From NCBI GenBank assembly GCA_010909165.1, contig VJWM01000235.1:186001-250000 (forward strand): a stretch of DNA of 64,000 nucleotides, in the 5' to 3' direction. The translations under genes and the position numbers were made by a program. This stretch comes from Anthoceros angustus. Taxonomy: Eukaryota; Plantae; Anthocerotophyta. Under the pieces are notes generated by a model. The model did not search any database. It saw only the letters and a list, made by a program, of their open reading frames with translations, and was not told where the DNA came from. Numbering within the stretch: position 1 is the first letter of the stretch; each line of letters opens with the position of its first letter. Of this stretch, positions 6,781-50,080 are shown piece after piece.

Positions 6781-7197
6781 ACGCCGTGGAAGAAGGTAAT
6801 AGGTTGAAGATAACAGTGCACTCACCAAGTTCCTGGAGAGAGTTGCATTGAGGAAAATGATGATTCGGATGAAAATCCCAAAATAAGGGTGGTTTGACAA
6901 GCGCTGATGAAAGAGACATCCGACTTCAAAGACCAATCGCAACAAGAACCCGCGGCAGAGGCAACGGAACCGGACTATTGGTGCTTTTGAAGGCATGTTT
7001 GATGATGATCCGACAAGGTCACTGTCAAGGAGACTAAACACAGAGAGGATAGAAAGGTGATAGGGTATTCTTCGTAGCTTTAGGGCATAGGGTAGATAGA
7101 TGAGGTGTCTATGTGGACGCCGACCGATTTGTGCAACTTATGTCGTCTGGCTTCCGCCACATCCATGCACCTCCAAGAAGACATATTTCCTCACGAT

Positions 7198-16870: not shown

Positions 16871-19105
16871 TATCTGGGAAGAAAGGTGCCTCGGCTGTGG
16901 GGAATTGTTGCGAGCCCAGGAGCAAGAAGCAGCCTTGGTGGAGAAGGCCCACAAGTTGGCAGATCGGTACAAGAGGGAGCGGGATGAGGCACGTGGCCGA
17001 ACCAGGAAGGAAAAGGGGAAAGGGAAGCGAAGTAGTAGGGCCACGACTGGGGTAGTGGAGGGGACTACCGAAGGAAGGGAGGAGCAACCGAGGTAGTCAA
17101 ACACCTACCGAGTTGCCGAAATGACGGTGAGTCCACTCAGCAAAACGCTATCGACATTGGCGCGCCCAACCCTCGCCATGAGCGCCACAGAAAAGGGCAC
17201 TCCGAGGATACGGATCGACAGGGTAGCCTACGGAGGAGAGGGTAAGCACCTACCTCAAAGTTAGGGTCCTATTATGTTGCGACACATGGATGAGGAAACT
17301 TATGTTCCCGGTCTATATGTGAATGGGGAACGCGTGCTTAACTCTCAACGTGCGTGTGGAAATAGGAAGGACTGTGGCCTACCCATCGCAAGTGAGGACC
17401 CGAAGTGGATACTTCTTCCACGGCGCCCGAGTATGGGGGTTGGCCCCCTATTATGCGGAGGCGATTCTGAAGGAATTAAGTGAGGAAGAAGTCCAGGCTT
17501 GGGTGGACGAGGAGCCGGTAATAATCCTCAGCAATAGGCGGCCAGCGGAAGAGGGGGAAGCTCAAGGATGGGGTATGCCTCAAATTAGGACGTCCAGCAG
17601 TGACAGTGAGGTGGAAGTATTGTGGGAAGACTCTGATCGGGCGGGGGAGGGCTCATGGCGTGAGAGGGGAAAGGGCGGGCTGCCAAGTCGAAGGCGCACA
17701 GAAGCGAGGCAAATAGGTGATAGCATCCTAGGGATGGAATTTGGTTAGGATGTGACCGACCTCAAGACCGCTCCTCAATTGTGAAGCGGTCCTTCACGAA
17801 GAGGCAGCCATCTTTAGGACCTATAAAACTGGGGCAAAATGACGCCCACCCAATGTATAAGAGGGATGAATTATGCCTCTCATGCCAGATAATTCTAGTT
17901 GAGATCCCCACGTCACGGTGGCTGGTTGGAGACGTCCGATTGATGAGGCGGGTGCGCGAGACGCCCTAGGGGTGGTCGAGCTTGCTCCGCAGCTAGTGGA
18001 GAGGGGTGAGTGAGCGCCCTCGCCGGCTAAAGGAGTGAGGAAATCGAGGGATTACGCTGGGCGCAGTCCGGAGCTTGCCTTGCACGTCACCGTGACGCCC
18101 GAGAATTCCTCCTTCCTTACCCTTCTTCTTCCCGCCGGGCTAGTTCAAATTTCAAGAGTGTACGTGGTTGTGTGGGCTGGAAGCCCGAGGGCGACGAGAG
18201 AGAGAGAGAGAATTGGAAGAAGCGAATCGTGGAGGAGAAGGAAGAGTGGTCAGCAATTTACGCAATGCGAGGTGTGAGGCTGTGTGGAGAAGTTGGGAAG
18301 GGGAACTAACTGAGTGACTAACAAGCATTGCGGTGCGGATCAGAGAGAATCCAAACCGTGCCGTTTGCGGGAAGTGAGCACAAGAGGTGAAATATCATTC
18401 CTTCCCGGAATGTGTGTGAGGTGGCCCCTTTGTGTGTGTGTGAAGTGGCTTGAGAGGATCGCGGAACTATGGTCCTTAGGAATCGCGTGTGTAAAAGTAC
18501 CAAATGTGGAGCGCGTAATCAAAAGTCTCGACTCCGGCAGCAATGGTCACCGCCTGCGGCAGATCCGCGGCAATCAGGCGCCGAAATAAGTCGCTAGGGT
18601 TTGCTGGGACCCACCTGTAGTCAAGCTAACCACCGTAGTGGTAAGGGTCACCTGTAGAGTAGATCGGGAACGTTGGGGAATAAGATCCTCATGTCGGGGA
18701 GTAAGTGTCCGGGGTAGCTGGAGGAAGAGAGACGAATAGATGTAGGTAAGAGGAGTAATAGCAGGAAAGTCCCGACTTAGGTGAAGGCCGTCGAGCGATA
18801 GAAGTGCCTTCGCACAAACCATTCCCTCGGGAGCGAATCCAGACTACAAATAACATTGAGGGTGAATGTGAACCTCAGTGTCCTGGGACACAAAGGTTAC
18901 ACCCACAAGATCTCCGTCTGGCCAGATTGGTACTTAGGGGATGGGGTGCCTTGAAGGTGAGTGGATGCCCTTGGGGCAAGTAGCTTAGGCACACCATGGT
19001 ACAAGTTGTGCTAGTACTGTCCCATGACGGAAATCCGTCCTTAGTGGACTTATATAAAATTCTTCTTCTTCTTCTTCATAAGGCTCGAGGAACGAGCACA
19101 TCGAC

Positions 19106-33901: not shown

Positions 33902-35706
33902 AACGTGTTTATCGAACTTCCTGAAGCTTGATTAAAAAACTAGGGAGGGAATAATTGTTCTTGTTTTCTTCCTAATTCGTACGTGAGCCAGGGTACCGGA
34001 AAACATCTCCGAAAAAAAGGGTGTCACCCACTAAAGTTCCTACTTTCCATCCAGCAATGTTTCTGTCGAATGGTGGTCGCAAACTCGAACCTATGGGATT
34101 AATGCAAAGTAGGAATGGTAAGGAAGGCCGTTCCTTCCGGGAAGGGACGACTGTAAATTCAGTTTTGGGAGGAAAATGTGGTTTGGTAAGGACACAACAA
34201 AAGCCACGGACAGGGTATTTCCAAAACACAGTAACATCTAGAAATAGACGTACAACATTCACTCTGGGACCCCGGAACAAACCGTGATTTCAGTTTCACT
34301 CATCACCAGAGTTCAACCCTTCGTCATCACTTGGTCCACCTTCTCTAGCATTGTCATCACTATCTTCAGCGGCACTTTGACTTGCAGGCTGTATGAAGTC
34401 GCGCAACTCGCAGAGCTTATCCCTTATCGCTGTTTTGTCCACCGCATACATATGTTTCCATGCGTTCAACATAAACCCATAATACAAGATGGCTATTTCA
34501 TTCACAAACACCTCCTGTATGTTTTTTGGGTAATGGACCTTATTCGTTTTTTTCCTCGGCATCAGACTAGATGGGTTAGCACTCTGACGGACTATGTATT
34601 CCTACACATATCTCCTTCAGACGATCCGTGCTCGGTCCGATACCGGATAAGAAAGTGAGGTCGTGGTGCATCTAGCTCACAATGACTCCCAATCCGTAAT
34701 GGCATGTTATGCGTGTCCATAGTGCACGACGCTGTAAACATCCCTTCCGGATTTCCATTATATCTTCATTCATCCGCGCCATTATCTTTTCCGGCATTTT
34801 GATATGCCCCTGGCACATATCACGTGGAGGTCCTCAATAATGCCTCATCCAAAGCAAAGCTTCATCCGCACTTGAAGTGGTCAGTCAGATGATCCACTTC
34901 GCACGTGAAAACCACTTCCAAGGACGTAGCACTAGCCCAATGTTATTCTCCACAATGATAGCAATCTCCTTCCCGTCCACCCAAAAGGCTTCCCACCACT
35001 TGTACTCTTCAATACCTATGGACGCAAAATCTTTTAACCCTTCTTGCAAATGGGCCACACCTTCCACGGTGATAGGATACCCCTGCTCCTTCTTGTCCCC
35101 CAGCTTCACCCGCAGATGCTATGGTGCAGGTGGCCGGCCGGCGCCCCTTAGCACCACCCGTCGATGTGGTGGATCTAGGGGAGGCGCTGGTCGGCGCCTC
35201 CTGCACCACCGTCGGTGCATGCGTTGTTGATCTAGGGGAGGCGCCGACCGCCGGCGCCTCCTAGCATGCTCTTGCTCATGGGCACCGGCCGCCTCCCCAG
35301 CACTGCCCATGGGCGCCGGCCGGCCGGCGCCCTCTCATAGGCTTTCTTTAAGAAAATGAATATTTGGCAGTTCAAAAGCCTTGTTATTTGGAAATGTTGG
35401 TCAAGTGGTTGGGAGAAAGGCATAGTGATGAGGAGATTCTGAGTTCAAAACTTGCATCTTCTAAATAACTCAACTTTGTTGGTTTTAAGGATGGGCGCAT
35501 AGGCAACCAACTTTGTTCATTTTAAGGAGACCTTACTGCATTGCCTAAAGCCTGTCGTGATGTTCTGTGATTTCGTGAGTCGCATGCATGTCAGTGAAGG
35601 TGCTCCGGTTCGATCTGACCTTCCCTTCCTTACCCGCACATTCGCTTGACTGCAAAAAAAACAGCAAGTATAAGGGCACACGGTATGTTAGATTATTGGC
35701 ATCCAT

Positions 35707-36397
35707 CTTCAAACAAAGCACGCACCTTCAATCGAGGGGAAGACTTGGGTCTCGCAACTGCGAGGCTTGGAGTTGAGAGTAGTCACGCCGTCAGTACCAC
35801 ATCGAGGCTCACATGTATGTATGAATACGCCAAGAAATCAGACAGACAAATGTATATGTCCGCCAAACAAAGAGTGCATAGTGTCTTCGCATACGCGTAA
35901 CTTCATCCATCGCTGCCTTCAGCGCCGCCTCCGCCTTTATCACCCGGCTTGTGCTTGGTTAGCCGCCACACCCTATGCTGGCCATCCGTCACCCTATGGC
36001 GCCGCCATCGCGCCATGATCGATCCGTTGGGCCACGCCGTGTGTGGGCACGGCCACCACGCTTACTCCGCTGTTGACTATTAGGTTCTTACCTACTCGGG
36101 CCACCGCATAGTGGTTGGGTTTATCCTAATCGACTACCAAATATATATGTAGACACATGCATGGGTTTTGGGCGTGATTGTAACTCTCACTATCGCCTTC
36201 TAAAGTATTCGTGCTATCACCCATATCCGATCTTCCTACCCGAGCGTGCCGCCGTGATGTCACCCAGGATTTGAGAGCCGCATGTGAAGGTGCTCCAATT
36301 CGATCTGACCTTCCCTTCCTTACCTGGCACATTCAGTTGGACTGCAAAAAAAACAGCAAGTATAAGGGCACACGGTATGTTAGATTATTGGCATCCA
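35707..36397 (-). repeat. 3' LTR of the Gypsy element (an extra partial copy of its right end lies at 35550-35706)
   Basis: Colinear with 43197-43735 (TTCAATCGAGGGGAAG..ATCCGATCTTCCTACCCGAGC). It begins TGGATGCC on the minus strand immediately after the PPT. Confidence 0.8.
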
Positions 36398-36410
36398 TCT
36401 CCCCCCCCCC
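36398..36410 (-). promoter_or_regulatory. Polypurine tract (GGGGGGGGGGAGA) before the 3' LTR
   Basis: Plus strand TCTCCCCCCCCCC directly adjacent to the LTR boundary TCCA. Confidence 0.8.
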
Positions 36411-36504
36411 AGTTTGGGCAGAGGTTGGCAAGCCCAAGCTGGTAGCAACGATGTAGCAGCTGTTGTTGTGGGTGGAGAACTGCGGTTAGCAACCGTACGC
36501 CTCT

Positions 36505-36645
36505 CGCAGGAATTACGGGCGAACGGGGCACCATAGTTGATCTGGCACTTCGGTGAGAGGTGGTGTGAGATGAACAAGTGATAACCCCTGCTGTAAACCG
36601 ACAGAGCATGAGCATGCGTCCACCCTCCCCGCAGATTTGAGTAGT
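36505..36645 (-). CDS. PHD finger at the end of the Gypsy pol
   Basis: Across small frameshifts the minus strand reads QICGEGGRMLMLC..RGYHLF.LTPPLTEVPDQLWCPV, matching the PHD pattern CxxC..LLCDxC..YHxxCLxPPL..VP...W.CPxC. Confidence 0.75.
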
Positions 36646-37129
36646 CCGTGGGATCCAATCTCACGATGATGTTAGATCCAAGTTGGGCAATTCTTCATGT
36701 GATCGGTCATGGTCCTCCCATCTCGACCTGCACAAGAAAACGCCATTCCCCGCATCTCCTTCACCCGGAGCACATGTCCGGCGGTGCTAGTATCCAAGGT
36801 ATCATCAAGATATACAAAAATCCCGGAGAACTTCTTGAGCCGAAGCTTCCTCGTGGGCATCGTAAGGTATCTTTGGTCCGGGCGATGGCAGACGCATATG
36901 GCCATGGCCATCGCTTTTTGAAGAGGGCTGCCTTTCGCCTACACGCCCATGTGGCTGGACCGCCCAAGTCCACAACACGGTGCATTTGTCGGGCAATGGC
37001 AGATGGGTTCTCTTCAAACAACAGGAAATATGGCGAGAAATGGGCCGCATGCTTGCTCGCGATATAGCCCATAGCAATATAAGGGAGGCCAAGTCCCAAT
37101 CCGCCTTTGGGCATTTGGAGGCATAGCAT

Positions 37130-37620
37130 GGAGCCCTTTCTTAATTGTTTGCACCATCCGCCGCCATACCGCCCGAGGATGGTCCGGTTCGGCGTGATCT
37201 ATCGGCGCATCCAGAGATCTTGGAATTCCCAGCGGAACTCACCTTGACCTGCTGGGCACTCAAGCACCGCCAAATCTCCCAACACATTATGCAAGAATGC
37301 TTGTGCTACGGAACTCTTATCGGGAGAGCCACTACCTCCACCCACTTGGAGAAGTGTTCCATCATCACCATCACATACACGCTTGGCCTCGGCGTCCCTT
37401 CCCAATCAGTCACATGACCACCGAAAAATAGGCCCATAATGGGCAACGGTGCAAACCGGGATGCTTTGAATGGTGAATGATGTCTTACCCGATCGCATTG
37501 TTCATGCCACTTTGCTTCACTTGGGTACATCCGTGCGAGAAGTGGAGTGAGCAAACCGAAGTTCGCTTAACACCAAAATGGCCCAAGTACACAGATAAGG
37601 CGCCTGCGTGGTGGAGGCAC
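37130..37620 (-). CDS. Gypsy integrase (zinc-binding and core fragments)
   Basis: LGHFGVKRT, PLPIMGLF, YVMVMMEHFSKWVEVVALP, QAFLHNVLGDL..QGEFRWEFQDL. Confidence 0.85.
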
Positions 37621-37949
37621 AAGCCGGCCCACGCCATTGCCCAACCTCCGACAAGGTAGCCATCATGCCGGGCGGCGTCGGTTCATCTGCGATCCGCACA
37701 TCAAGATCAACCTCGCTCGTTTGCACATACCGAGGGTAAGGCCGGTCTTCCATGTCCTTGACGAGTTTGCCGCATCCACTGCAACCCGCCCTAGCATGTC
37801 ATGCGGGCCACCGGCAACTGTGAAAGCCTCATAGCTCCCGCTTTGCCTCCGTGCTATCCTCGTAGAGCTCTCATCCGGGTTCCCGGATAGGGTATCTGCG
37901 TTCTGATGCCTGACTCCGGGCCGATGCACCACCACGAACTCGTAGTCTT

Positions 37950-39100
37950 GCAAAATCGCCACGGCGGTTTCCCACTTAGCTTTGAGTTGGCCATTAACCA
38001 CTTCAAAGGCTGGTGATCCGTGACTAGGGTGACTGGTGAAAGGTGGTCAAAATGGCAAAATGGCAACCGCTCATACCGGGCTGCACACTCGCCTTCAGCC
38101 TGCTTGTTGCTTGTTGAAGCATAGCTATGACTCTCTCATGCCCATGCTCATCCAATTGGCCAAAGCTCCCAAGCACTCCAAATGGTATGGACAACAAAGG
38201 GTTTCCCAAAGTCCGGTCCGCCATGATCGTGCCTGCGGTGATGTGACTCATCACCGCTGAGCGACTTGTCCATGCCCATGTAGTGTCCTTATCATGTCAT
38301 TGAGTGGCTTGGCAGCTGAAGTTCGGATATACACCGATAATAGTTGCACAAGGGAACGCCTCACACCGAGACATTGGTGGGTTCCTTGACCCGCAAGATG
38401 GCTTGAATCTTGGCTGCATGTGGCATCATGCCATTCGGGACAATCCTATGACCCAAATATGCCACAGTGTTCATCCCAAATTCGCACTTTGCTGGGTGAC
38501 AAGTCAATTGGGCCTTGCGTAGGCGTTGGAACAGGTCCTCAAGGTGGACCAAGTGTGATTCGAAGTCTGCACTGTGCACAAGCACATCGTCTATGTAACA
38601 AAGTAGATTAGCAGACCCGGTCAACAATAGGTCCATCACCTGAATGCGTTCCTGAACCCAAAAGGCATCACTAGCCATTCCACCGTGAGAACCGTGGAAT
38701 CTTTTGATGTCCTCCTCTGCTACTGCACGTTGAAACCTTGTCTCAAGTCCAACGTAGAAAAGTAACGGGACTGCCCAATGCTGACAAAAATCTCCTCTGG
38801 AGTTGGCATGGGGTAACGGTCTTGAGCGGTGACGGCATTGATGGGGCGATAATCCCCGCACATCCTCTTCTCAGTCCACAGCCCCTGGTTGTCTTTCTTT
38901 GGTGGCATGATCGTGGCAGCGGCGAAATCCGAACTTGACGGTCGGATGAGTCCAGCATCCAAGAGCTCCTTGCACGCGTCGACCATTTCCCATTCCGATT
39001 TTTCGAGCGGTACTGCTTTGGTAGATGGGCTCCTCCTGGTCGCTTGATACGAAATGTGGTCACGCACCGCTTGAGCTCCTTCATTGAAAATGCAAAACAA
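37950..39100 (-). CDS. Gypsy reverse transcriptase and RNase H
   Basis: ELLDAGLIRPSSSDFAAATIMPPKKDNQGLWTEKRMCGDYRPINAVTAQDRYPMPTPEEIF..FSTLDLRQGF; LLCYIDDVLVHS..LTCHPAKCEFG..YLGH; LVTDHQPLKWLM. Confidence 0.95.
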
Positions 39101-39389
39101 TCCTTGTACCTAAGCAATAATGTCCGATCCGCCACGCTGGTCATCAAGGCTCAGTCCCATGGTCCAAAGGAACGTGTCCGCCAAAGGTGGCCGGTGCCCT
39201 CCATCCGTCCCGGCATCCTCAAGGGTTGATGTAAAGAAAAGTAGACCTCGACCGCCTGCCACCATACGGCTCGCCTCCTCCCTGGATCGAGCCGGAAGGA
39301 TGAGGTGGTAAATCCGGGAAAGGGAAAGTGTACCGCATCACAAGGCATGTGCCGTGAGCGAATCTTTGCTTGGACTGCTAAGATCTGGA

Positions 39390-40260
39390 ATGCCAAACAC
39401 AAGCTAACCAACCATGTGACGTTGAGGTCCATGGCTCGCCAAGTGCCGCATATTAGAAGCGGCCATGTGGAGTGAGTTTGGAAACCCATTAGCCTTTTTT
39501 CTTCCACGCAGGCTCCTCCCATTGTTGTGTGGTTGTATTTAGGAGCAATCCAAAGACCTTGTCCCCTGTAAGCATGTGAAGCGGGAAAAGTGACCATGTT
39601 GGGAGAGTGCTTCGGTGCCCAGGAATGTTGGGGTACCAGGCCTTCGGCAGCCCGGCTTGGTGGTGAGGTTCCACTGCAAGGCCAACGCCGGGGTGTTGCT
39701 AAGCACTATCTCCAGACCGCCTTGCACCCAATTTGTCCAATAGTTGCTGCAGCGGTGAGCGCCCACAGGCCGCATCCATGAGGAAGGGGGTCCTGTGATG
39801 TTGCACGAGCATCATGTCTTGTTTCACCCGGGCCCGTGAGTCAAATCGAGGTGTGTTTTCCACAGGTATGCACAATGAGGGCTATTGCTGCGCCACACCA
39901 AGATTCGTAAGTCTCGAAAAGCCCCGTGGTCTTGCAGCGTGCCCGGCCTGAGAAAACCTTGCACTCCCATCCAGAATGACCAAGTCAATGGGAGCCAATG
40001 CATGGATGTGACGCCTGGATGTATGTAGACATCCTGTGGCATGCGAAGGTACTTGCCATCAGAAATGGGCAAATGACTAGGAAAGCAGTAGCCCTTGGAT
40101 GCGAAAAGCAGCCAATGTTTGGGAGATCTCACAGTTGTCACAGTAAATGTACCGGTGGATAGTGAGCCCGGCCTTGAGAATCGCTTCTAGGCCTGTGCAT
40201 AACCCACCAAAGAGTTCAACCACCGTCATTCCTGCTACAGGCAGTGTCCACCTGATGGGT
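39390..40260 (-). CDS. DNMT3-like C5-cytosine DNA methyltransferase domain within the Gypsy pol (between protease and RT)
   Basis: Motif I VVELFGGLCTGLEAILKAGLTIHRYIYCD (about 40230); motif IV IDLVI-GWEC-QGF-QAG (about 39990-39945, needs three 1-nt insertions); motif VI AYL-ENTP (about 39860); motif VIII MDAA..AHRCSNYWTN (about 39780-39730; DNMT3A has IDAKEVSAAHRARYFWGN); motifs IX/X EEKRLMGFQTHST..RAMDLNV (about 39500-39420; DNMT3A has ERVFGFPVHYT..LGRSWSV). Confidence 0.88.
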
Positions 40261-40595
40261 TGATGATCAACAGTGCCTGGGTGAGCAGGGTCGGTGTAGG
40301 TGCTGTCCAGCAGAGTCAGAGCACGGGCCACTTGATCCTTGACCCCTTTCAACATGATAGTTGCATCTTTTCCCGCCGAAACAACCTGCACGGCATCTGT
40401 GATACATGCTATTGCCGCCCATGCTTCATTAGGCTCATCCTCGAGCTCGGTTGACAACCATCTGTCCACGTGAGTGGTGTCCCTTGCCATCGCCGGTGTC
40501 GCAGCAGCTTTGTTGTCGGATGTGGCGATAGCCAATTTCGCTCCTCATCATTCCTTCCATGGGGAAAAGTGGGCCACCTCTCGCCCTCCACGCTG

Positions 40596-40961
40596 CTAAC
40601 TGGCGGTAGGCCTGCTGGCCCAATTGTCGACATCGACCGGGCGGAAGAGAAATTCTTGCCCCAACAGAACATCATAATTGGTAGCAGTGGTCACTAAACA
40701 ATGGACAGCTAATGTCATGGCCGCGGGCGTCCCTGGTTTCAATGTGATGCGCACCGGTTTGACAGTTTCCCCACATACTGGCTCTATGGCCCCTGATGCA
40801 GTCCGGATGTTCCATGGGGAGCTCTTAAGAGCATCTCCCGCCAGACGAAGCCGTGCGGCCAGCACCTTGCCGATGATGACGGGCTGGGCCCCAGTGTCAA
40901 GGAGTACCATTTTGGGGGCATACCCGTTGACGGTGACGTGCCCTGCAGTATTGTCAACCAT
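40596..40961 (-). CDS. Retroviral-type aspartic protease
   Basis: VTVNGYAPKMVLLDTGAQPVIIG..YDVLLGQEFL. Confidence 0.9.
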   Translation of the reverse strand: MVDNTAGHVTVNGYAPKMVLLDTGAQPVIIGKVLAARLRLAGDALKSSPWNIRTASGAIEPVCGETVKPVRITLKPGTPAAMTLAVHCLVTTATNYDVLLGQEFLFRPVDVDNWASRPTAS

Positions 40962-41049
40962 GGCATTGCTAACCCGAACTGTCGCCCGGTTTGCCAGGGT
41001 GCTATCCGGGCTGCTCTCGTGATCCGGCTCGTTGAGTGGCAGCCTTGCC

Positions 41050-42521
41050 GAGCCCCCAGCAGAACCTCATGAGGTACTTGGTGGGTAACACCGCATGGGT
41101 GGGTAAAGGTTGGTCACCCCAATCACGCCATTGCGCCCGACCGCGCTCCAGATTCGATGCAAACGCCCAGCCCCTATGCATCGAGGGAAAGCGTGGCATG
41201 TCTACCCTTGGCTCGGGTGACGGTGCGGTAGCAAATATATCGCCGAATCCCTCCGCTTTGCGTCATGGCGCACGCATTCGTGTCCGGGTCACCTAGATGA
41301 TCTTGTCTCTTGTGCACCCAGTGGCAATGTGGCAAAAGACTGGGAATGGCCGCCCCTCGTCTTATGGACCGATTAGCCATCACCACCCTCCAACCGCCTT
41401 TTTCAGCTCATGCCCCAACCACGGCGGTAGTCCGAGTCTCACTTGTCAACAACTTGTGTCTGCAAGCTTGGTGTGTGGCAATCCATAATCTTCCTCCCCA
41501 GACACGAACATAGACTGGTGCCACCGGCTCGTTGGATAATCGGAGCGTAGGTAGGCATACCATTGCCCATGTTGGCCACCAATGCCCCTACTGGTGGTGA
41601 GGGCAAGCGGCTTCTAAGGAGACCTTGTCAAGATACCGCGCCTTTGCCTTGGCTTTATCCTGCACTGCCTCGGAAGTGCCACAGGCTTGTGGTGCCGGTC
41701 ATACTCCCAAAGATCAGTGGTTCGCCCGTGGCTCCCTGGTATCTCGGGTGCCGAAGCACCGTAACATGCCCCGACTGGCGGCGTGCAGAGCCCCTCGTGT
41801 GGGCACTTACATGGTGAGGTGCTCCGCCACAATGATTGCACAGTGGGGCCACCGTGGCTGATTGCTGGCCGAGCCGGTTTGGCTGCGACTCTTGGGGCTA
41901 CTCACTCGATGTTCCCTTACTTGAGAACATGCTCGATAGTGTGAAGGCCGAGTGCTGGATGCATAATCGAGAATGCTATCTCCTTCCGCCTCGCCTCCTC
42001 GTGAACTGCTCCGGTACGAGTCCCCATACTTATCCACCAATGAGGTGATGAGTTGAAAATGGAACAAAGGGTCACCCTCTAAAGTGAGAAACTTCTCACC
42101 GCCTCTTGATCCGTTAGCATCCTCGCTCCCTCCCCGCATCGCAATGCGGAAAGTCATTTGCACCGCTTTCCCTTCTGCGCAAAGGCTGCCACCCCGCAAT
42201 CTTCTCCGCTTTTGAGAGGAAGGCCTCCAATATCCCCATGAATGCCTCCACTGGGTTGGCGTGATTTGGGGTATAGATGAACTCACTCACACTGGTGGTC
42301 GCCACCCGCCCACCGCTGCTCACAACCGTCTGCACGGTGGAAGCAATTGTCCCAGCTGCTATTCCAGCTTGATGCGTGTTGATCGCAGTCGCCAACTTGG
42401 CGTTAGGCCTGCGGGCACTCGGAAAAGTGGGTTTTGGAGTCCGGATCGCTGGTGAGGTCGCAAAGTGAGCCTCATACAAGTCGAGCTTCATCCGCCATGG
42501 AACCGCCAACCGCTCAAACAT
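41050..42521 (-). CDS. Gypsy gag region (fragmented)
   Basis: Fragmented ORFs 42114..42521 and 41807..42286 lie between the 5' LTR and the protease, with a possible Cys/His knuckle remnant near 41.3 kb. Assigned mainly by position. Confidence 0.55.
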
Positions 42522-43196
42522 ATATAGGAGGTATAAGATGATCCGTGTTTGAATTTCACACGATCATCATGCCATTCACGAACAACCTAAAGTCCCTCAA
42601 TGTCGAGTTCCGTGTCGCCCAGAACTTCTCCCGCCAGGGTGGCCCTCCCTCCATGATATCGACTCTCGACGGCCGATCTGTGTCTCGACCTAATTGCAAG
42701 CTCCTAGGTCCATGCACCCATGCGATTGTATGAACCGCCACTTGTTGGGTCACGGGTCTTGATTAGACCAGGCGGTTGTGAGGTGACCAACTATCCTCAC
42801 CGTAGGTGTGTCACGCAAACCCTCCTGCTCCTCCTCGCCACTTCCTCACTCAGAAACCGCCGTCACCGCCCACCTCCTCCGTGAGCACGCTCGACGAGCC
42901 CTAACGGGGATGTCTCTTGTCCTCAGCCGGTATCGAAGCTCCGGCTCATCAGATTGCATCACCCATGGAATCAAGCGTGGAAAGAGGTCAGTTTCTCAAA
43001 TAGCGCTGTGAGTAAAACAACTAGCAAGTACCCGCTTGCAACCACCCGAGCTGGCGAGGCTATGTATGCCTCCAAATGCCGAACTTGATGCAACACTGAT
43101 CACTTCAATCGTGATGATACGGCTAGCTGCAGCTGAGAAGCCCTTCCGGCCGCCACCACCTCCACTCACATGTGGAGAAGATCAAGACAGCTTGAT

Positions 43197-43735
43197 GAAG
43201 TAACAAATTCGCCGCACCCTTCAATCGAGGGGAAGCACTTGGGTCTCGAACTTGCGAGGCTTGGAGTTGAGAGTAGTCACGCCCGCCCCGCAGTACCACA
43301 TCGAGGCTCACACATGTATGTATGAATACGCAAGAAATCGACACGTATATGCACAAACAAAGAGTGCATAGTGTCTTCCGTGCATACGCGTAACTCAATC
43401 AACGTCTTCAGCGCCGCCCGCCTTATCACCGGGTTTGTGCGCTTGGTTAGTCCCCTGCCGGCCATCCGTCACCCTATGGCCGCCATCGCGCCATGATCGA
43501 TCCGGGCCACGCGCCGTGTGGCACGGCCCGCCACCACGTTCGTTACTGGGCCGTTGACTATTAGGGTTCTTACGCATCATAGGGCCAGGCATAGTGGTTG
43601 GGTTTATCCTAATCCACCGCTAAATATATATATGTAGACACATGCATGGGTTTTGGGCGTGATTGTAACTCTCACTATCGCCTTCTAAAGTATTCATGCT
43701 ATCACCCATATCCGATCTTCCTACCCGAGCCGCAT
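43197..43735 (-). repeat. 5' LTR of the Gypsy element (right end truncated)
   Basis: Matches about 35710-36245 and lacks the last about 150 bp present in the other LTR. Confidence 0.75.
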
Positions 43736-43736
43736 G

Positions 43737-43971
43737 TCAAGTGGTTGCATTGAGTTCCACAAGGTTGAAGACCACGATTGGCGAGCTTTTAGATGAGGGT
43801 CAGCAAACCCTAAATGTTGTGTGGCAGTCGACACCGTCCGAAGCTCAGCTTAAGAATTATACTTATGAATACGAGCAAGCATTGGAGGAGAATGACAGCT
43901 TTGACGTAGAGAGTATGGACCGCCTTCGGAATTTGGTGGTGGTCCTTGACTCGATCGGCAAGAAGGCATAG
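43737..43971 (+). pseudogene. Diverged paralog of the C-terminus of the ParB-methyltransferase gene
   Basis: QVVALSSTRLKTTIGELLDEGQQTL..ENDSFDVESMDRLRNLVVVLD versus QVVALSVKRLKTTTGELMDDG(M)QTL..EN..FD..EMERMRNLVLVVD at 12206-12410 and 13860-14050. Confidence 0.75.
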
Positions 43972-43974
43972 GCA

Positions 43975-45340
43975 AAGTCGCTCCGCACTCTTGAATGACT
44001 ATTGTCGATGCTGATGACCACTTCCTCCTTTAGCAGTTGTTCATAGAAAGAGCGGACAAATGGAATAAGACTTGCCAGCTGCCCGCCCGCATCCTTGAGT
44101 TCTGTGAAAATAGCCGTCCTAGATAATGTTGCAAGCGTTCGAAATGTCCACCTATAGGGCGACCCAATCCGAATGAGACTCCCCAACCGCCTCGACTTCA
44201 AAGGACGTCAACTCACAGCCCCCCGAAGTGGCAATCCCAAATTGATGGGGGCAAAGGTGCACCTGGAATTGCTCCTGGACTTGAATGGCAATGCTGTGGC
44301 TTATGAAGCACAAGAACGCCTCCCTAACGGCGATAGGGCACACCCTAGGCGTTGGCTTCTCCATAGCCAGTAAGCTCTTGGTACCCAACACTTGGGAGAT
44401 CTGGTGGGGGGTCTCTCCCCTGGCCACAGCTGCCAATAGAATGGAAAGCTCCAAAAACCACTAGAAAGATCCTCGGGAGCAAAATAATCCCGAAGGTGGT
44501 CGTAGACTATTCTGAGATCCAAGAAAGCCGAGGCGGGTGGCCCTCAAAGACCGCCATACTGCCAGACAAAAAGGCTCCTTCACGAATATGTGATATCCTG
44601 TTGAATGAAATTCTTGCGAGGAGGCGTGGTCTCCGGAGGTTGGCGCCATCGGTTCTGGGCGAAGAGCCCGGGCAGCCCTGGCGTATTCCCTAGCACGGCC
44701 CAACATGCGGCACTTCTTAAGACGCGCCTTGGCGGGGTCCGGACGGACCCGACCCACTTTAGTCAAATCCAGCCTGAACCTCGCCGCACGCCCCCCTTCC
44801 TCATGCAAAGCCCCCCAGTCCTCAACCCGGAACTAACGGAGACGGAGGTGGCTGTCCGTCTTTCTAGGCACAAGGATATCCCTGTGCCCTGAATGACCAC
44901 CCCTAGAGCGGCGAAGACACCACTGAGAGAGAAAGAAGAACAAAGTCCAGGCCACCTCGTCCCCAGGGTCGAGCGCGAGGCGCTCCATGGGAAGCTAGTA
45001 GGCAAAGCGAACGTCGCCATGAAGGCGCCTCGGGAGACGCCGAAAAAGGTGGGGTCCTGAAAACACATTTCGTACAAGACGAGCAGGTGATCTGACTGCA
45101 AGTGCAACCATTGCCAGGACTCTTGAGGTGGCCCAAGGGGAGTAGCCAAACGCGAAGTTGGGTGGGCAACCGCGCTGGAAAAAGCAAGCCTCACATGAGC
45201 CTCCCATGTACTACGATCGAAGTCTTTGTAATTGTGCCCAATGTGACATTTCACCCCTTTAATCGCACAGCAAAGCTGAGGGCAGACTAGACAGGGAGTA
45301 TCCTTGATTGTCCCTGAAAAAGTGGATTGCACCATTGGGA
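43975..45340 (-). mobile_element. CRE-like non-LTR retrotransposon, 5' part (zinc finger and start of RT), 3'-truncated
   Basis: N-terminal CLVCPQLCCAIKGVKCHIGHNYK, then LLAMEKPTPRVCPIAVREAF..HLCPHQFGIATSGGCE..HSDWVAL-QVDISNA..SRTAIFTEL..LIPFVRSFY, i.e. RT subdomains of the RPIAVGE / QFGV..GGCE / D..NAFN type. Confidence 0.7.
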
Positions 45341-49034: not shown

Positions 49035-50080
49035 CAAAGTGCATTAGATATTCCTTTTTGAGGTAAAGGCACCTTACGATACACTTTCCCATCAATACCC
49101 GATGGCCATTAAGGTAGCAAGTATGACCTATATATAGCCACGTCATCATGGAGGACAACCTTCTCCTGCACATCCATCCCATGTCAATCGTGTGCGCCTA
49201 AGCACGTGCCATTCCTAATCATGCGATCCCCGTTCCCGACATGCTCGCCTCCAGAGCACGGTGGATGTCCCTTCCCCACCGTGGTCGATGCGATCGATGC
49301 CCCCCGTTCTTGCCATTGTAGCCAATGCCCCCTACCCCCCTGCGCACGGGGAGGGCAGGGGCATCGGCTGTCAAAGGTATATGTAAGTAGAGAGGCCATC
49401 GGCCGTATATGAAAGGCCATCGGCCATTCAAGGTGTTCTCTATTGATTAAAAATAGCCCAATCCACATCGAAACTTTGCGGTAGAGCGCCCTAATGAATG
49501 GTTCTGTCGTGTTGTATGATGATGTGTTGCATAAACACGTCACTGTACAGCATGACAAATGTGGACCATCGTAGCTCTCAAGACGCATATGCACGGAAGG
49601 TGATCTACAATTGTAGGGCACGCTAGGGCAGCAATACACGTTGAGGGATGCATATGCAATTACTGAGAAGATTGACCCAGCAGTGGCTTACAATAGAGCG
49701 TTTGCTAAGCAAGCTTGTAGACCCAGCAACCAGAGGCCTGGACAAGGCTCAATGCAATAGTTAAGTTCCACAACAGCAAGAGGTTAGGAAGAACCAGACA
49801 GGCCAATGCAGCAATTAATATGTTGGGTAATAGATGTTTCAAATGCGGGAGTCCGACTCACAAGGCTAGGGTGTGCTCTAACCCATTTGGAGAAGATAGA
49901 GCACATTTGAAGTGCAATGGCTGCGACAGAATAGGCCACACGGAGGCAATGTACTGTCAGCGGCATCCAGAGCTAAGACCACCAATAACGGGACAGCATA
50001 ACAGCAATGGAGTATCAACATTGTTGAAGCACAAAGTGAAGGCTAAGGCAATTCAAAGAGGAAAGAAGATCTAATTACTA
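49035..50080 (+). mobile_element. LTR-retroelement remnant with Gag CCHC zinc knuckles (ORF 49820..50074)
   Basis: RCFKCGSPTHKARVC and KCNGCDRIGHTEAMYC; homologous to 27670-28640. Confidence 0.7.

What the first reader, a model, noticed from the sequence alone, without database searches (positions are those of the whole stretch)
36500..42521. Ty3/Gypsy retrotransposon with a DNMT3-like cytosine methyltransferase embedded between protease and RT, in a land plant
Seen in sequence: C5-MTase motifs I, IV (with Cys), VI, VIII, IX and X occur in order on the pol strand at about 40260-39390, between LLDTGA (protease) and the RT. The AHR..YWTN and GF..H.T..RAMD segments align best with DNMT3 rather than MET1, CMT or DRM. 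Motif IV reads GWEC instead of GSPC and is restored by three single-base insertions, two of them in homopolymers, so the domain may be more intact than the consensus shows. Established knowledge (from memory): de Mendoza et al. 2018 reported DNMT-carrying retrotransposons in Symbiodinium and the charophyte Klebsormidium and showed de novo CG methylation activity. I do not know of a description in embryophytes, but I cannot exclude one. Inference: the element may methylate its own cDNA or new insertions.
Basis: partly seen in the sequence, partly recalled or inferred. Interest (0 to 1): 0.92.

Follow-up and report, generated by a model that had tools for sequence, protein, structure and literature searches.

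The report
Dead methyltransferase-carrying Gypsy retrotransposon, hornwort
This is a decayed copy of a jumping gene that carries its own DNA-methylating enzyme. The same family turns out to have intact, young copies in the model liverwort Marchantia, so a phenomenon described only in algae also occurs in land plants and can be tested there.

Summary
On the minus strand, window 40235-39364 holds a complete DNMT3-type cytosine-C5 methyltransferase domain. Motifs I, IV, VI, VIII, IX and X are in order, between the protease (40961-40596) and the RT.

- **Significance.** A frameshift-aware profile alignment scores 302 half-bits. The part downstream of motif I alone scores 145, against a null of 31 +/- 4.
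- **Not a chimera.** The whole pol is colinear with intact PR-DNMT-RT-RNaseH-INT-PHD polyproteins. That architecture recurs in Marchantia polymorpha, and the DNMT module also recurs in annotated proteins of Calypogeia and Sphagnum.
- **Repeats.** The element has split direct repeats (A-coding-B-A-B). Marchantia copies share this, and the published legend for KnitGypsy-Dnmt3 of Klebsormidium describes it.
- **Motif IV.** "GWEC" is a native family variant, not damage.
- **This copy is dead.** It has about 11-12 frame breaks in the DNMT, about 38 plus 6 stops across pol, and 12 of 51 conserved DNMT positions lost.
- **Selection.** In Marchantia the DNMT is under purifying selection (dN/dS 0.16).
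- **Novelty.** It is a new member of a known kind. I found no paper describing it in embryophytes, although such proteins are already in public databases.

First readers of this scan flagged the same thing many times elsewhere in this genome.

The parts
43213..43730 (-). Repeat A1, the 5' terminal direct repeat of the element
   Evidence: Matches 35721-36245 at 83% over 551 columns. The first 105 nt (43730-43626) are 99% identical to 36245-36141. Alignment.
41000..43200 (-). 5' region with a decayed gag-like coding stretch
   Evidence: tblastx matches to the gag region of the colinear relatives L001 and L002 at 42603-42014 and 41840-41814. Short ORFs at 42114-42521 and 41807-42286. No Pfam hit.
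40596..40961 (-). Aspartyl protease (LLDTGA), the one unbroken ORF piece
   Evidence: PF13975 E 6.9e-10 and PF13650 E 1.2e-8. Aligns to P0283 residues 663-772, 42 of 106 identical.
40236..40544 (-). Conserved N-terminal extension of the methyltransferase module
   Evidence: Residues 21-105 of the 155-aa piece match the stretch upstream of motif I in P0001, P0004, P0032 and P0062.
39364..40235 (-). DNMT3-like cytosine-C5 methyltransferase domain, motifs I to X, decayed
   Evidence: Frameshift-aware profile alignment scores 301.7 half-bits over profile 7-343 with about 11 frame breaks. PDB hits are DNMT3A/B only. It falls in the type-B clade, SH-aLRT 99. 39 of 51 conserved columns are kept.
38361..39147 (-). 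Reverse transcriptase
   Evidence: PF00078 E 4.2e-11 on 38361-38861. P0283 residues 1443-1596 map to 38878-38445, 75 of 142 identical.
37942..38278 (-). RNase H
   Evidence: P0283 residues 1660-1789 map to 38278-37942, 48 of 114 identical. tblastn of several polyproteins hits the same stretch.
37176..37639 (-). Integrase (H2C2 zinc finger and catalytic core)
   Evidence: P0283 residues 1925-2090 map to 37639-37176, 68 of 132 identical. P0025 and P0050 integrase tblastn hits at 37650-37315.
36521..36639 (-). Decayed PHD finger at the C-terminus of the integrase
   Evidence: P0283 residues 2300-2344 (Pfam PHD E 6e-11) align here, 20 of 40 identical, with 5 frame breaks and several Cys lost.
36284..36400 (-). 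Repeat B1
   Evidence: 94% identical to 35594-35708 over 117 nt, with 61 nt identical.
35721..36245 (-). Repeat A2
   Evidence: Pairs with 43213-43730.
35594..35708 (-). Repeat B2, the 3' end of the element
   Evidence: Pairs with 36284-36400. The layout A1-coding-B1-A2-B2 is the same as in Marchantia loci L005 and L006.

Best explanation
Window 35594-43730 (minus strand) is one old, inactivated copy of a lineage of Ty3/Gypsy-type retrotransposons. Their pol polyprotein reads gag-PR-DNMT3-RT-RNaseH-INT-PHD, and they are bounded by split direct repeats (A-coding-B-A-B).

Shown:
- The DNMT3-type domain is complete in motif order and statistically certain.
- It belongs to the same clade as the DNMT of intact elements with this architecture in Marchantia polymorpha and in environmental contigs. 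Annotated Calypogeia and Sphagnum proteins also match that DNMT strongly.
- In Marchantia the domain evolves under purifying selection as strong as that on RT and INT.
- This copy cannot make a protein.

Inferred, for live family members:
- The DNMT is made as part of pol, next to RT.
- It methylates cytosines de novo on the element's own newly made cDNA or on the fresh insertion. The new copy therefore arrives carrying host-like methylation.
- The C-terminal PHD finger steers integration by reading histone tails, as chromodomains do in chromoviruses.

My confidence in the identity is about 0.9, and in the cDNA or self-methylation mechanism about 0.35. The single figure below weights identity.
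For: - Protease and RT Pfam hits flank the domain.
- PDB hits are DNMT3A/B only, for motif I.
- 159 relatives were found, many of them Gypsy pol proteins with DNA_methylase, rve and PHD.
- Frameshift-aware score is 301.7. The motif-I-independent part scores 145.3 against a null of 30.7 +/- 3.9.
- Pol is colinear with the intact type-B polyprotein P0283 from PR to the PHD C-terminus: 1471 aligned residues, 591 identical.
- L002 and L004 show the same PR-DNMT-RT order.
- The DNMT tree has window + L001 + L002 + P0052 as one split, SH-aLRT 99.
- Marchantia, Calypogeia and Sphagnum proteins match.
- Marchantia L005 has intact ORF1 (gag-PR-DNMT) and ORF2 (RT-RH-INT-PHD) with A and B repeats 99-100% identical.
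- The same A-coding-B-A-B layout is in the window and in L006. It is described for KnitGypsy-Dnmt3 in PMC5890265.
- dN/dS is 0.16 for DNMT and 0.14 for RT-RH-INT-PHD between Marchantia subfamilies.
- The profile's best PDB match and the AF2 fold's top 50 matches are DNMT3A/B/C.
- The cDNA-methylation idea is the one de Mendoza et al. argue for DIRS-Dnmt3, which methylated CG de novo in yeast.
Against: - No enzymatic or methylome evidence exists for any member of this lineage.
- K. nitens sequences were not on hand, so kinship to KnitGypsy-Dnmt3 rests on the shared domain type and repeat layout only.
- Most family members carry Glu in place of the near-universal Pro of the motif IV Pro-Cys. Whether that variant is active is untested.
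- No PBS, TG..CA ends or target-site duplication could be defined.
- The A repeats are unevenly diverged (99% over 105 nt, about 80% elsewhere), which simple ageing does not explain.
- No sequencing run was listed, so real frame breaks could not be separated from assembly errors.
- I did not check the organism's identity myself.
Confidence: 0.85

Rival explanations
1. The copy is essentially intact. Most frame breaks are uncorrected long-read indel errors in a repeat that short reads could not polish, so the element may still be active in this genome.
For: - 10 of 11 DNMT frame breaks behave as missing bases, and no stop lies in the aligned DNMT path.
- Earlier agents noted host genes in this assembly 'riddled with small frame-breaking gaps as assembled'.
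- The B repeats and the first 105 nt of A are 94-100% identical.
Against: - 12 of 51 columns conserved at 90% or more are substituted or deleted, including the second Arg of motif VIII. Intact type-B relatives lose 1-7.
- There are 6 in-frame stops across pol.
- The A repeats differ by multi-base indels of 3-9 nt and many substitutions.
- Other ORFs of 0.8-1.0 kb in the same window are unbroken, so the local indel-error rate is not 1 per 80 nt everywhere.
Confidence: 0.08
2. The methyltransferase is a one-off. It would be a host DNMT3 fragment captured by this copy, or a nested or chimeric insertion joining two unrelated sequences.
For: No Pfam PF00145 hit on any single ORF piece. The domain sits at an unusual place in pol.
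Against: - The same order PR-DNMT-RT-RH-INT-PHD occurs in single intact ORFs (P0283, P0282) and in Marchantia, L002 and L004.
- The window is colinear with P0283 across all junctions.
- The DNMT groups with element-borne DNMTs.
- First readers flagged the same arrangement on many other pieces of this genome (unchecked).
Confidence: 0.02
3. The element-borne DNMT of live relatives does not methylate DNA. It could methylate RNA, or serve a structural or nucleic-acid-binding role in the particle, with the Pro-to-Glu change in motif IV marking an altered activity.
For: - Most family members have GWEC rather than the canonical Pro-Cys.
- SymbioLINE-Dnmt failed to methylate DNA in yeast, and RNA methylation was proposed for it.
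- DNMT2 shows that this fold can act on RNA (established knowledge).
Against: - The catalytic Cys, the ENV Glu, the motif VIII Arg pair and motifs IX and X are invariant or nearly so.
- The fold and the best sequence matches are DNMT3A/B/C, not DNMT2.
- Marchantia and several other type-B members keep the canonical GWPC.
- SymbioDIRS-Dnmt3 in pol was active on CG DNA.
Confidence: 0.15

Closest known systems
KnitGypsy-Dnmt3 of Klebsormidium nitens (de Mendoza et al. 2018, PMC5890265)
   Same: A non-rearranged DNMT3-type domain sits inside the pol ORF of a Gypsy-type element. The repeat layout is A-coding-B-A-B, as in DIRS elements. The DNMT is under purifying selection (Ka/Ks < 0.2 there; 0.16 in the Marchantia relatives here). 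The host is a streptophyte.
   Different: The host is an embryophyte (hornwort, with relatives in liverworts and a moss). This copy is dead.
Chlorophyte-type polyproteins (PR)-RT-RNaseH-DNMT-INT-PHD, database entries only (Haematococcus lacustris, Scenedesmus sp., Monoraphidium neglectum, Cymbomonas)
   Same: The DNMT module is homologous, including its N-terminal extension and family motifs (GWEC/GWPC, HRLRNYWTN, ERERAMGY, MD.N). The Gypsy backbone is the same, with a PHD finger after the integrase.
   Different: There the DNMT sits between RNase H and integrase; here it sits between protease and RT. The two DNMT sets are separated by a branch with SH-aLRT 99.
SymbioDIRS-Dnmt3 of Symbiodinium
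   Same: A DNMT3-type domain in pol, with two alternative domain orders in one family. This is the only element-borne DNMT3 shown to methylate CG de novo.
   Different: It is a tyrosine-recombinase (DIRS) element with no DDE integrase, from a dinoflagellate host, and was judged an independent capture.
Cellular DNMT3A/3B/3C and plant DNMT3 / DRM
   Same: The catalytic fold and motif order match (TM 0.86 to DNMT3A; profile E 3e-17).
   Different: There are no PWWP or ADD companion domains. Motif IV often has Glu for Pro. The domain is not circularly permuted as in DRM. It is embedded in a retroelement polyprotein.
Chromoviruses (Ty3/Gypsy with a chromodomain at the integrase C-terminus)
   Same: Gypsy pol with a chromatin-reader module after the integrase.

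Membership tests
Cytosine-C5 DNA methyltransferase (PF00145 fold) | Motifs I, IV, VI, VIII, IX and X in the canonical order | tested here: met
   Profile positions 7-343 of 347 align colinearly to 40235-39364. Motif-by-motif alignment with type-B relatives.
Cytosine-C5 DNA methyltransferase (PF00145 fold) | Catalytic Cys in motif IV and Glu of motif VI (ENV) | tested here: met
   GWEC and VENT are present in the read-through. Both columns are invariant in the family.
Cytosine-C5 DNA methyltransferase (PF00145 fold) | Significant match to the curated Pfam model | tested here: not met
   No PF00145 hit on any ORF piece of the window, as expected for fragments of 50 residues or fewer. Intact relatives pass the cut-off.
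Cytosine-C5 DNA methyltransferase (PF00145 fold) | An open reading frame able to encode the enzyme | tested here: not met
   About 11-12 frame breaks in the domain, and 12 of 51 conserved columns lost, including the second motif VIII Arg.
DNMT3 class (as against DNMT1/MET1, CMT, DRM, DNMT2) | Closest sequence and fold matches are DNMT3; motif order is not permuted | tested here: met
   The window piece hits DNMT3A/B only. Family profile: DNMT3A 3e-17 > DNMT3C > DNMT3B > DRM 3e-11 > HhaI, with no DNMT1 or CMT. Foldseek top 50 are all DNMT3A/B/C.
DNMT3 class (as against DNMT1/MET1, CMT, DRM, DNMT2) | Placement inside the DNMT3 clade in a tree with host DNMT3 and DRM | not tested
   No host DNMT3, DRM, CMT or MET1 sequences could be obtained. 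The tree holds element-borne domains only.
Ty3/Gypsy retrotransposon | Pol order PR-RT-RNaseH-INT with a DDE integrase | tested here: met
   Pfam PR and RT hits. Colinear alignment to P0283 PR, RT, RH, H2C2, rve and PHD.
Ty3/Gypsy retrotransposon | Two plain LTRs with TG..CA ends, PBS/PPT and a short target-site duplication | tested here: inconclusive
   The repeats are split (A1 ... B1-A2-B2), not two plain LTRs. No clear ends, PBS or TSD.
Gypsy-DNMT3 elements (KnitGypsy-Dnmt3 kind) | DNMT3-type domain inside the pol ORF of a Gypsy backbone | tested here: met
Gypsy-DNMT3 elements (KnitGypsy-Dnmt3 kind) | Repeat layout A-coding-B-A-B | tested here: met
   A = 43213-43730 and 35721-36245. B = 36284-36400 and 35594-35708. 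The layout as published is in the Fig. 4c legend. Also present in Marchantia L005 and L006.
Gypsy-DNMT3 elements (KnitGypsy-Dnmt3 kind) | Sequence kinship of DNMT and RT to the K. nitens copies | not testable with these tools
   No K. nitens protein appeared with a name. Cluster look-ups gave no organism.
Gypsy-DNMT3 elements (KnitGypsy-Dnmt3 kind) | DNMT kept by purifying selection | tested here: met
   This was tested in the Marchantia relatives, not in this copy. dN/dS is 0.16 over 335 ungapped codons, against 0.14 for RT-RH-INT-PHD.

The most novel reading that the evidence does not exclude
A still-active, bryophyte-wide lineage of Gypsy elements (PR-DNMT3-RT-RH-INT-PHD, split direct repeats) writes cytosine methylation itself. 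Its DNMT, including the unusual Glu-Cys catalytic-loop variant, would be an active de novo DNA methyltransferase acting on the element's cDNA or new insertions. Part of the methylation seen on such elements in land plants would then be self-made rather than host-imposed. The lineage and its chlorophyte sister architecture would stem from one ancient capture in green plants, not from a Klebsormidium-specific event.
Probability: 0.3. Interest if true: 0.8.

Novelty: new member of a known kind. Interest (0 to 1): 0.55.

Why it matters
Retrotransposons that carry a cytosine methyltransferase have been described in only two groups, dinoflagellates and one charophyte alga. What the enzyme does for the element is still unknown.

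Following this decayed hornwort copy outward gave three results:

1. The same kind of element lives in land plants: a hornwort, the liverworts Marchantia and Calypogeia, and the moss Sphagnum.
2. Marchantia polymorpha, a genetic model with good methylomes, has copies with intact ORFs, 99-100% identical terminal repeats and an identical gag-PR-DNMT protein at two loci. The function could therefore be tested by ordinary genetics and by expressing natural domains.
3. A sister architecture is common in chlorophyte algae, which questions the view of a lineage-specific capture in Klebsormidium.

The window copy itself is an ordinary dead transposon with no consequence for the host beyond being repeat DNA.

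Tried and rejected
- **Pfam on single ORF pieces of 39151-40535.** No DNA_methylase hit. The pieces are too short, and the frameshift-aware profile alignment replaced this test.
- **PDB searches with four downstream pieces.** Only chance hits.
- **The look-up of sequencing runs on 38300-44299.** None was listed. Read laying could therefore not be used, and neither expression nor the reality of the frame breaks could be checked.
- **Cluster look-ups for organism names of unnamed relatives.** No names or accessions.
- **Organism of run SRR33208241, the source of L001-L003.** It could not be learned.
- **No K. nitens protein surfaced by name**.
- **Atlas feature search.** It only said 'C5 methylase, Streptophyta commonest'. 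One atlas call failed on a length limit.
- **CpG observed/expected.** 0.78 in the element against 0.81-0.83 in the flanks, with a TG/CA excess of 1.29. This is compatible with past methylation but does not say who wrote it.
- **Repeat layout of one chlorophyte-type locus (Haematococcus, L009).** It is complicated by a nested element and was left unresolved.
- **Chance, a one-off host-gene capture and a chimeric join** were considered and rejected (see rivals).

Full report
**1. What is in the window**

The stretch is coded on the minus strand.
- A 121-aa ORF at 40596-40961 carries LLDTGA and hits aspartyl-protease families (PF13975, E 7e-10).
- The ORF at 38361-38861 hits RVT_1 (E 4e-11).
- The 1.2 kb between them is broken into short ORF pieces in all three frames. 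None of them reaches PF00145.
- The first piece (40080-40544) matches only DNMT3A and DNMT3B among all PDB sequences. The match is exactly at the start of the catalytic domain (24 of 24 hits; best E 0.003).
- The other four pieces gave only noise.

**2. Is the methyltransferase real?**

A full HMMER scan of 1.84 billion representatives with the first piece gave 159 hits at E<0.001. Many are long Gypsy polyproteins with RVT_1, RNase H, rve, PHD and, in several, PF00145.

From 46 of them I built a local HMM of the roughly 350-aa domain.
- Against all 3550 stop-to-stop pieces of the window in six frames, the three best hits all lie in 39154-40544(-), in colinear order (E 9e-21, 0.12, 0.3).
- I then wrote a profile-to-DNA alignment that allows frame changes.
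- It aligns profile positions 7-343 of 347 to 40235-39364 and scores 301.7 half-bits.
- The part downstream of the first piece, tested on its own with profile 57-347, scores 145.3.
- The nulls are 30.7 +/- 3.9 (maximum 49.8) for 200 dinucleotide shuffles and a maximum of 40.1 for 120 other window segments on both strands.

The path holds motifs I (ELFGG), IV (GWEC), VI (VENT), VIII (AHR..YWTN), IX (MGF) and X (AMDLN) in that order. It has about 11 frame breaks and no stop.

**3. Which class of methyltransferase?**

- A profile of 30 family members (A2) hits DNMT3A best (3e-17), then DNMT3C and DNMT3B (about 1e-14), then plant DRM (3e-11), then M.HhaI (1e-8).
- No DNMT1, MET1 or CMT chain passes E 0.01.
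- An AlphaFold model of an intact relative's domain (P0052, pLDDT 91.9) has DNMT3A/B/C as its 50 best PDB folds, with TM up to 0.86 of the target.
- The motif order is the unpermuted one, unlike DRM.
- A tree with host DNMT3 and DRM could not be made, because no such sequences could be obtained.

**4. Family, not accident**

Two architectures exist among the relatives.

The common one is (PR)-RT-RNaseH-DNMT-INT-PHD. Its named members are chlorophyte algae: Haematococcus lacustris, Scenedesmus sp., Monoraphidium neglectum and Cymbomonas.

The other has the DNMT between PR and RT, as in the window. It is seen in:
- Logan contigs L001-L003, which are colinear with the window from gag to RT. The DNMT of L002 has a single frame break.
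- A JGI metagenome contig, L004, with ORF1 gag-PR-DNMT of 1775 aa and ORF2 RT-RH-INT.
- Single ORFs of about 2350 aa reading PR-DNMT-RT-RH-INT-PHD, P0282 and P0283.
- At least 17 annotated 'hypothetical proteins' of Marchantia polymorpha.
- One annotated protein of the liverwort Calypogeia fissa and one of the moss Sphagnum fallax match the DNMT; Pfam shows DNA_methylase in the first and an integrase core in the second, so the full order was not seen there.

In a maximum-likelihood tree of 106 DNMT domains, the window groups with L001, L002/L003 and P0052. A branch with SH-aLRT 99 separates them from all 101 others. This was a quick search with LG+G4, and the window row was read through with X at each break.

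The whole pol of the window is colinear with P0283 from PR to the last residue of the PHD finger. That is 1471 aligned positions, 591 of them identical. A chimeric join or a one-off capture is therefore excluded.

**5. GWEC is native**

- Most members of the family have AGWECQD(L)S at motif IV.
- Within the PR-DNMT-RT group, the intact P0282, P0283 and L002 have GWEC.
- Marchantia and several others have the canonical GWPC.

These are family traits. They are not damage, and they are not a sign that the copy is secretly intact.

**6. State of this copy**

- Across pol there are about 38 frame breaks and 6 in-frame stops. Only the protease piece is unbroken.
- Of 51 DNMT columns conserved at 90% or more in 178 relatives, the window keeps 39. 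Intact PR-DNMT-RT relatives keep 44-50.
- The losses include the second Arg of motif VIII and part of motifs IX and X.
- The PHD finger has lost several Cys.
- The two A repeats are 83% identical with many 1-9 nt indels.
- Other ORFs of 0.8-1.0 kb in the window are unbroken, so a uniform assembly error rate does not explain the breaks.
- Poorer polishing inside repeats cannot be excluded, because no sequencing run was listed.

I judge the copy dead (about 0.9).

**7. Terminal structure**

The element does not have two plain LTRs. In element orientation it reads:
- A1 (43730-43213)
- coding region
- B1 (36400-36284)
- A2 (36245-35721)
- B2 (35708-35594)

The Marchantia copy L005 has the same layout:
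- A at 6826-7122 and 17248-17545, 99% identical.
- B at 17134-17246 and 17545-17657, 100% identical.
- Two intact ORFs of 1346 and 1043 aa between them. The second reads RT-RH-INT-PHD by Pfam.

A second subfamily copy, L006, has the same layout. This is the 'A-coding-B-A-B' arrangement that de Mendoza et al. describe for KnitGypsy-Dnmt3 of Klebsormidium nitens (Fig. 4c legend). I could not define TG..CA ends, a PBS or a target-site duplication.

**8. Selection and likely function**

- Between two Marchantia subfamilies the DNMT has dN/dS 0.16 (dS 0.27, 335 ungapped codons). RT-RH-INT-PHD has 0.14 and gag-PR has 0.21.
- The enzyme is therefore as necessary to the element as its polymerase.
- L006 and L007, on different scaffolds, encode the identical protein, which points to recent transposition.

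How it works is inference. The domain is made within pol, next to RT. The only tested element-borne DNMT3 (SymbioDIRS-Dnmt3) methylated CG de novo in yeast. Its authors argue for methylation of the cDNA on reverse transcription. I adopt that reading for live members at about 0.35, and add that the PHD finger probably reads histone tails to guide integration. An RNA-directed or non-catalytic role is the main rival (0.15).

**9. Comparison with what is known**

- The kind is known: Gypsy-DNMT3 in a streptophyte alga (PMC5890265). It is cited as 'streptophytes (Gypsy-DNMT3)' in a 2026 preprint and in PMC12344493.
- The 2018 survey did not include Marchantia, Sphagnum or any hornwort.
- Seven full-text searches found no description of such elements in embryophytes, and none of the Marchantia gene identifiers.
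- Many subscription papers are not in that library.
- The proteins themselves are public.

I therefore class the finding as a new member of a known kind. The domain position may or may not differ from the Klebsormidium element.

**10. Earlier notes of this scan**

- First readers flagged the same arrangement ('between protease and RT') on many other pieces of this genome. 115 notes hold the words 'methyltransferase gypsy', and none shown has a follow-up.
- The same stretch was noted in another window (s1-321940).
- The hornwort identity (Anthoceros angustus in one note) comes from other agents. I did not test it.

**Verdict**

This copy is a fossil. The value lies in the family it points to.

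Noticed in passing
L005:6826-17657 (Marchantia polymorpha chr 4, AP019869.1); also L006 and L007: Marchantia polymorpha carries apparently intact, young elements of this family. They have two unbroken ORFs (gag-PR-DNMT of 1346 aa and RT-RH-INT-PHD of 1043 aa) and A and B repeats 99-100% identical. The identical gag-PR-DNMT protein is encoded at two different scaffolds. DNMT dN/dS is 0.16.
   Followed up: partly
P0189, P0212, P0226, P0290 and about 150 unnamed proteins: A sister architecture, (PR)-RT-RNaseH-DNMT-INT-PHD, is abundant in chlorophyte algae (Haematococcus, Scenedesmus, Monoraphidium, Cymbomonas) and in metagenomes. Element-borne DNMT3 in green plants therefore looks far more widespread than the single Klebsormidium case in the literature.
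   Followed up: partly
window 43626-43730 vs 36141-36245, compared with 43213-43625 vs 35721-36140: The two A repeats are 99% identical over their first 105 nt (element orientation) but only about 80% identical, with many indels, over the remaining 400 nt. Uniform ageing does not explain this. Partial gene conversion, recombination between family members or uneven assembly quality are possible.
   Followed up: no
L008:1-18357 (ENA ERZ25067493, contig name ending in _c): The intact PR-DNMT-RT-RH-INT-PHD element P0283 lies in a head-to-tail array with a period of 8262 nt at 99.8% identity, with a 123-aa ORF between the pol copies. This could be a true tandem array, a circular form, or an assembly effect.
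   Followed up: no
In this copy it is decayed, with 5 frame breaks and several Cys lost.
   Followed up: yes
window 49826-49978 (+): A short match (39% over 51 aa, E 5e-6) to the gag zinc-knuckle region of P0283 and P0270 lies outside the element, on the other strand. It is probably part of another retroelement.
   Followed up: no
It may be broken, or the assembly may be noisy there.
   Followed up: no
L009:959-1495, 6907-7130, 17228-17438 (Haematococcus lacustris): Around one chlorophyte-type element, two different repeats flank the coding region (X upstream, Y downstream), and an adjacent X-Y pair lies 5.4 kb further upstream beyond a nested Gypsy. This hints at a related split-repeat layout, but it was not resolved.
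   Followed up: partly
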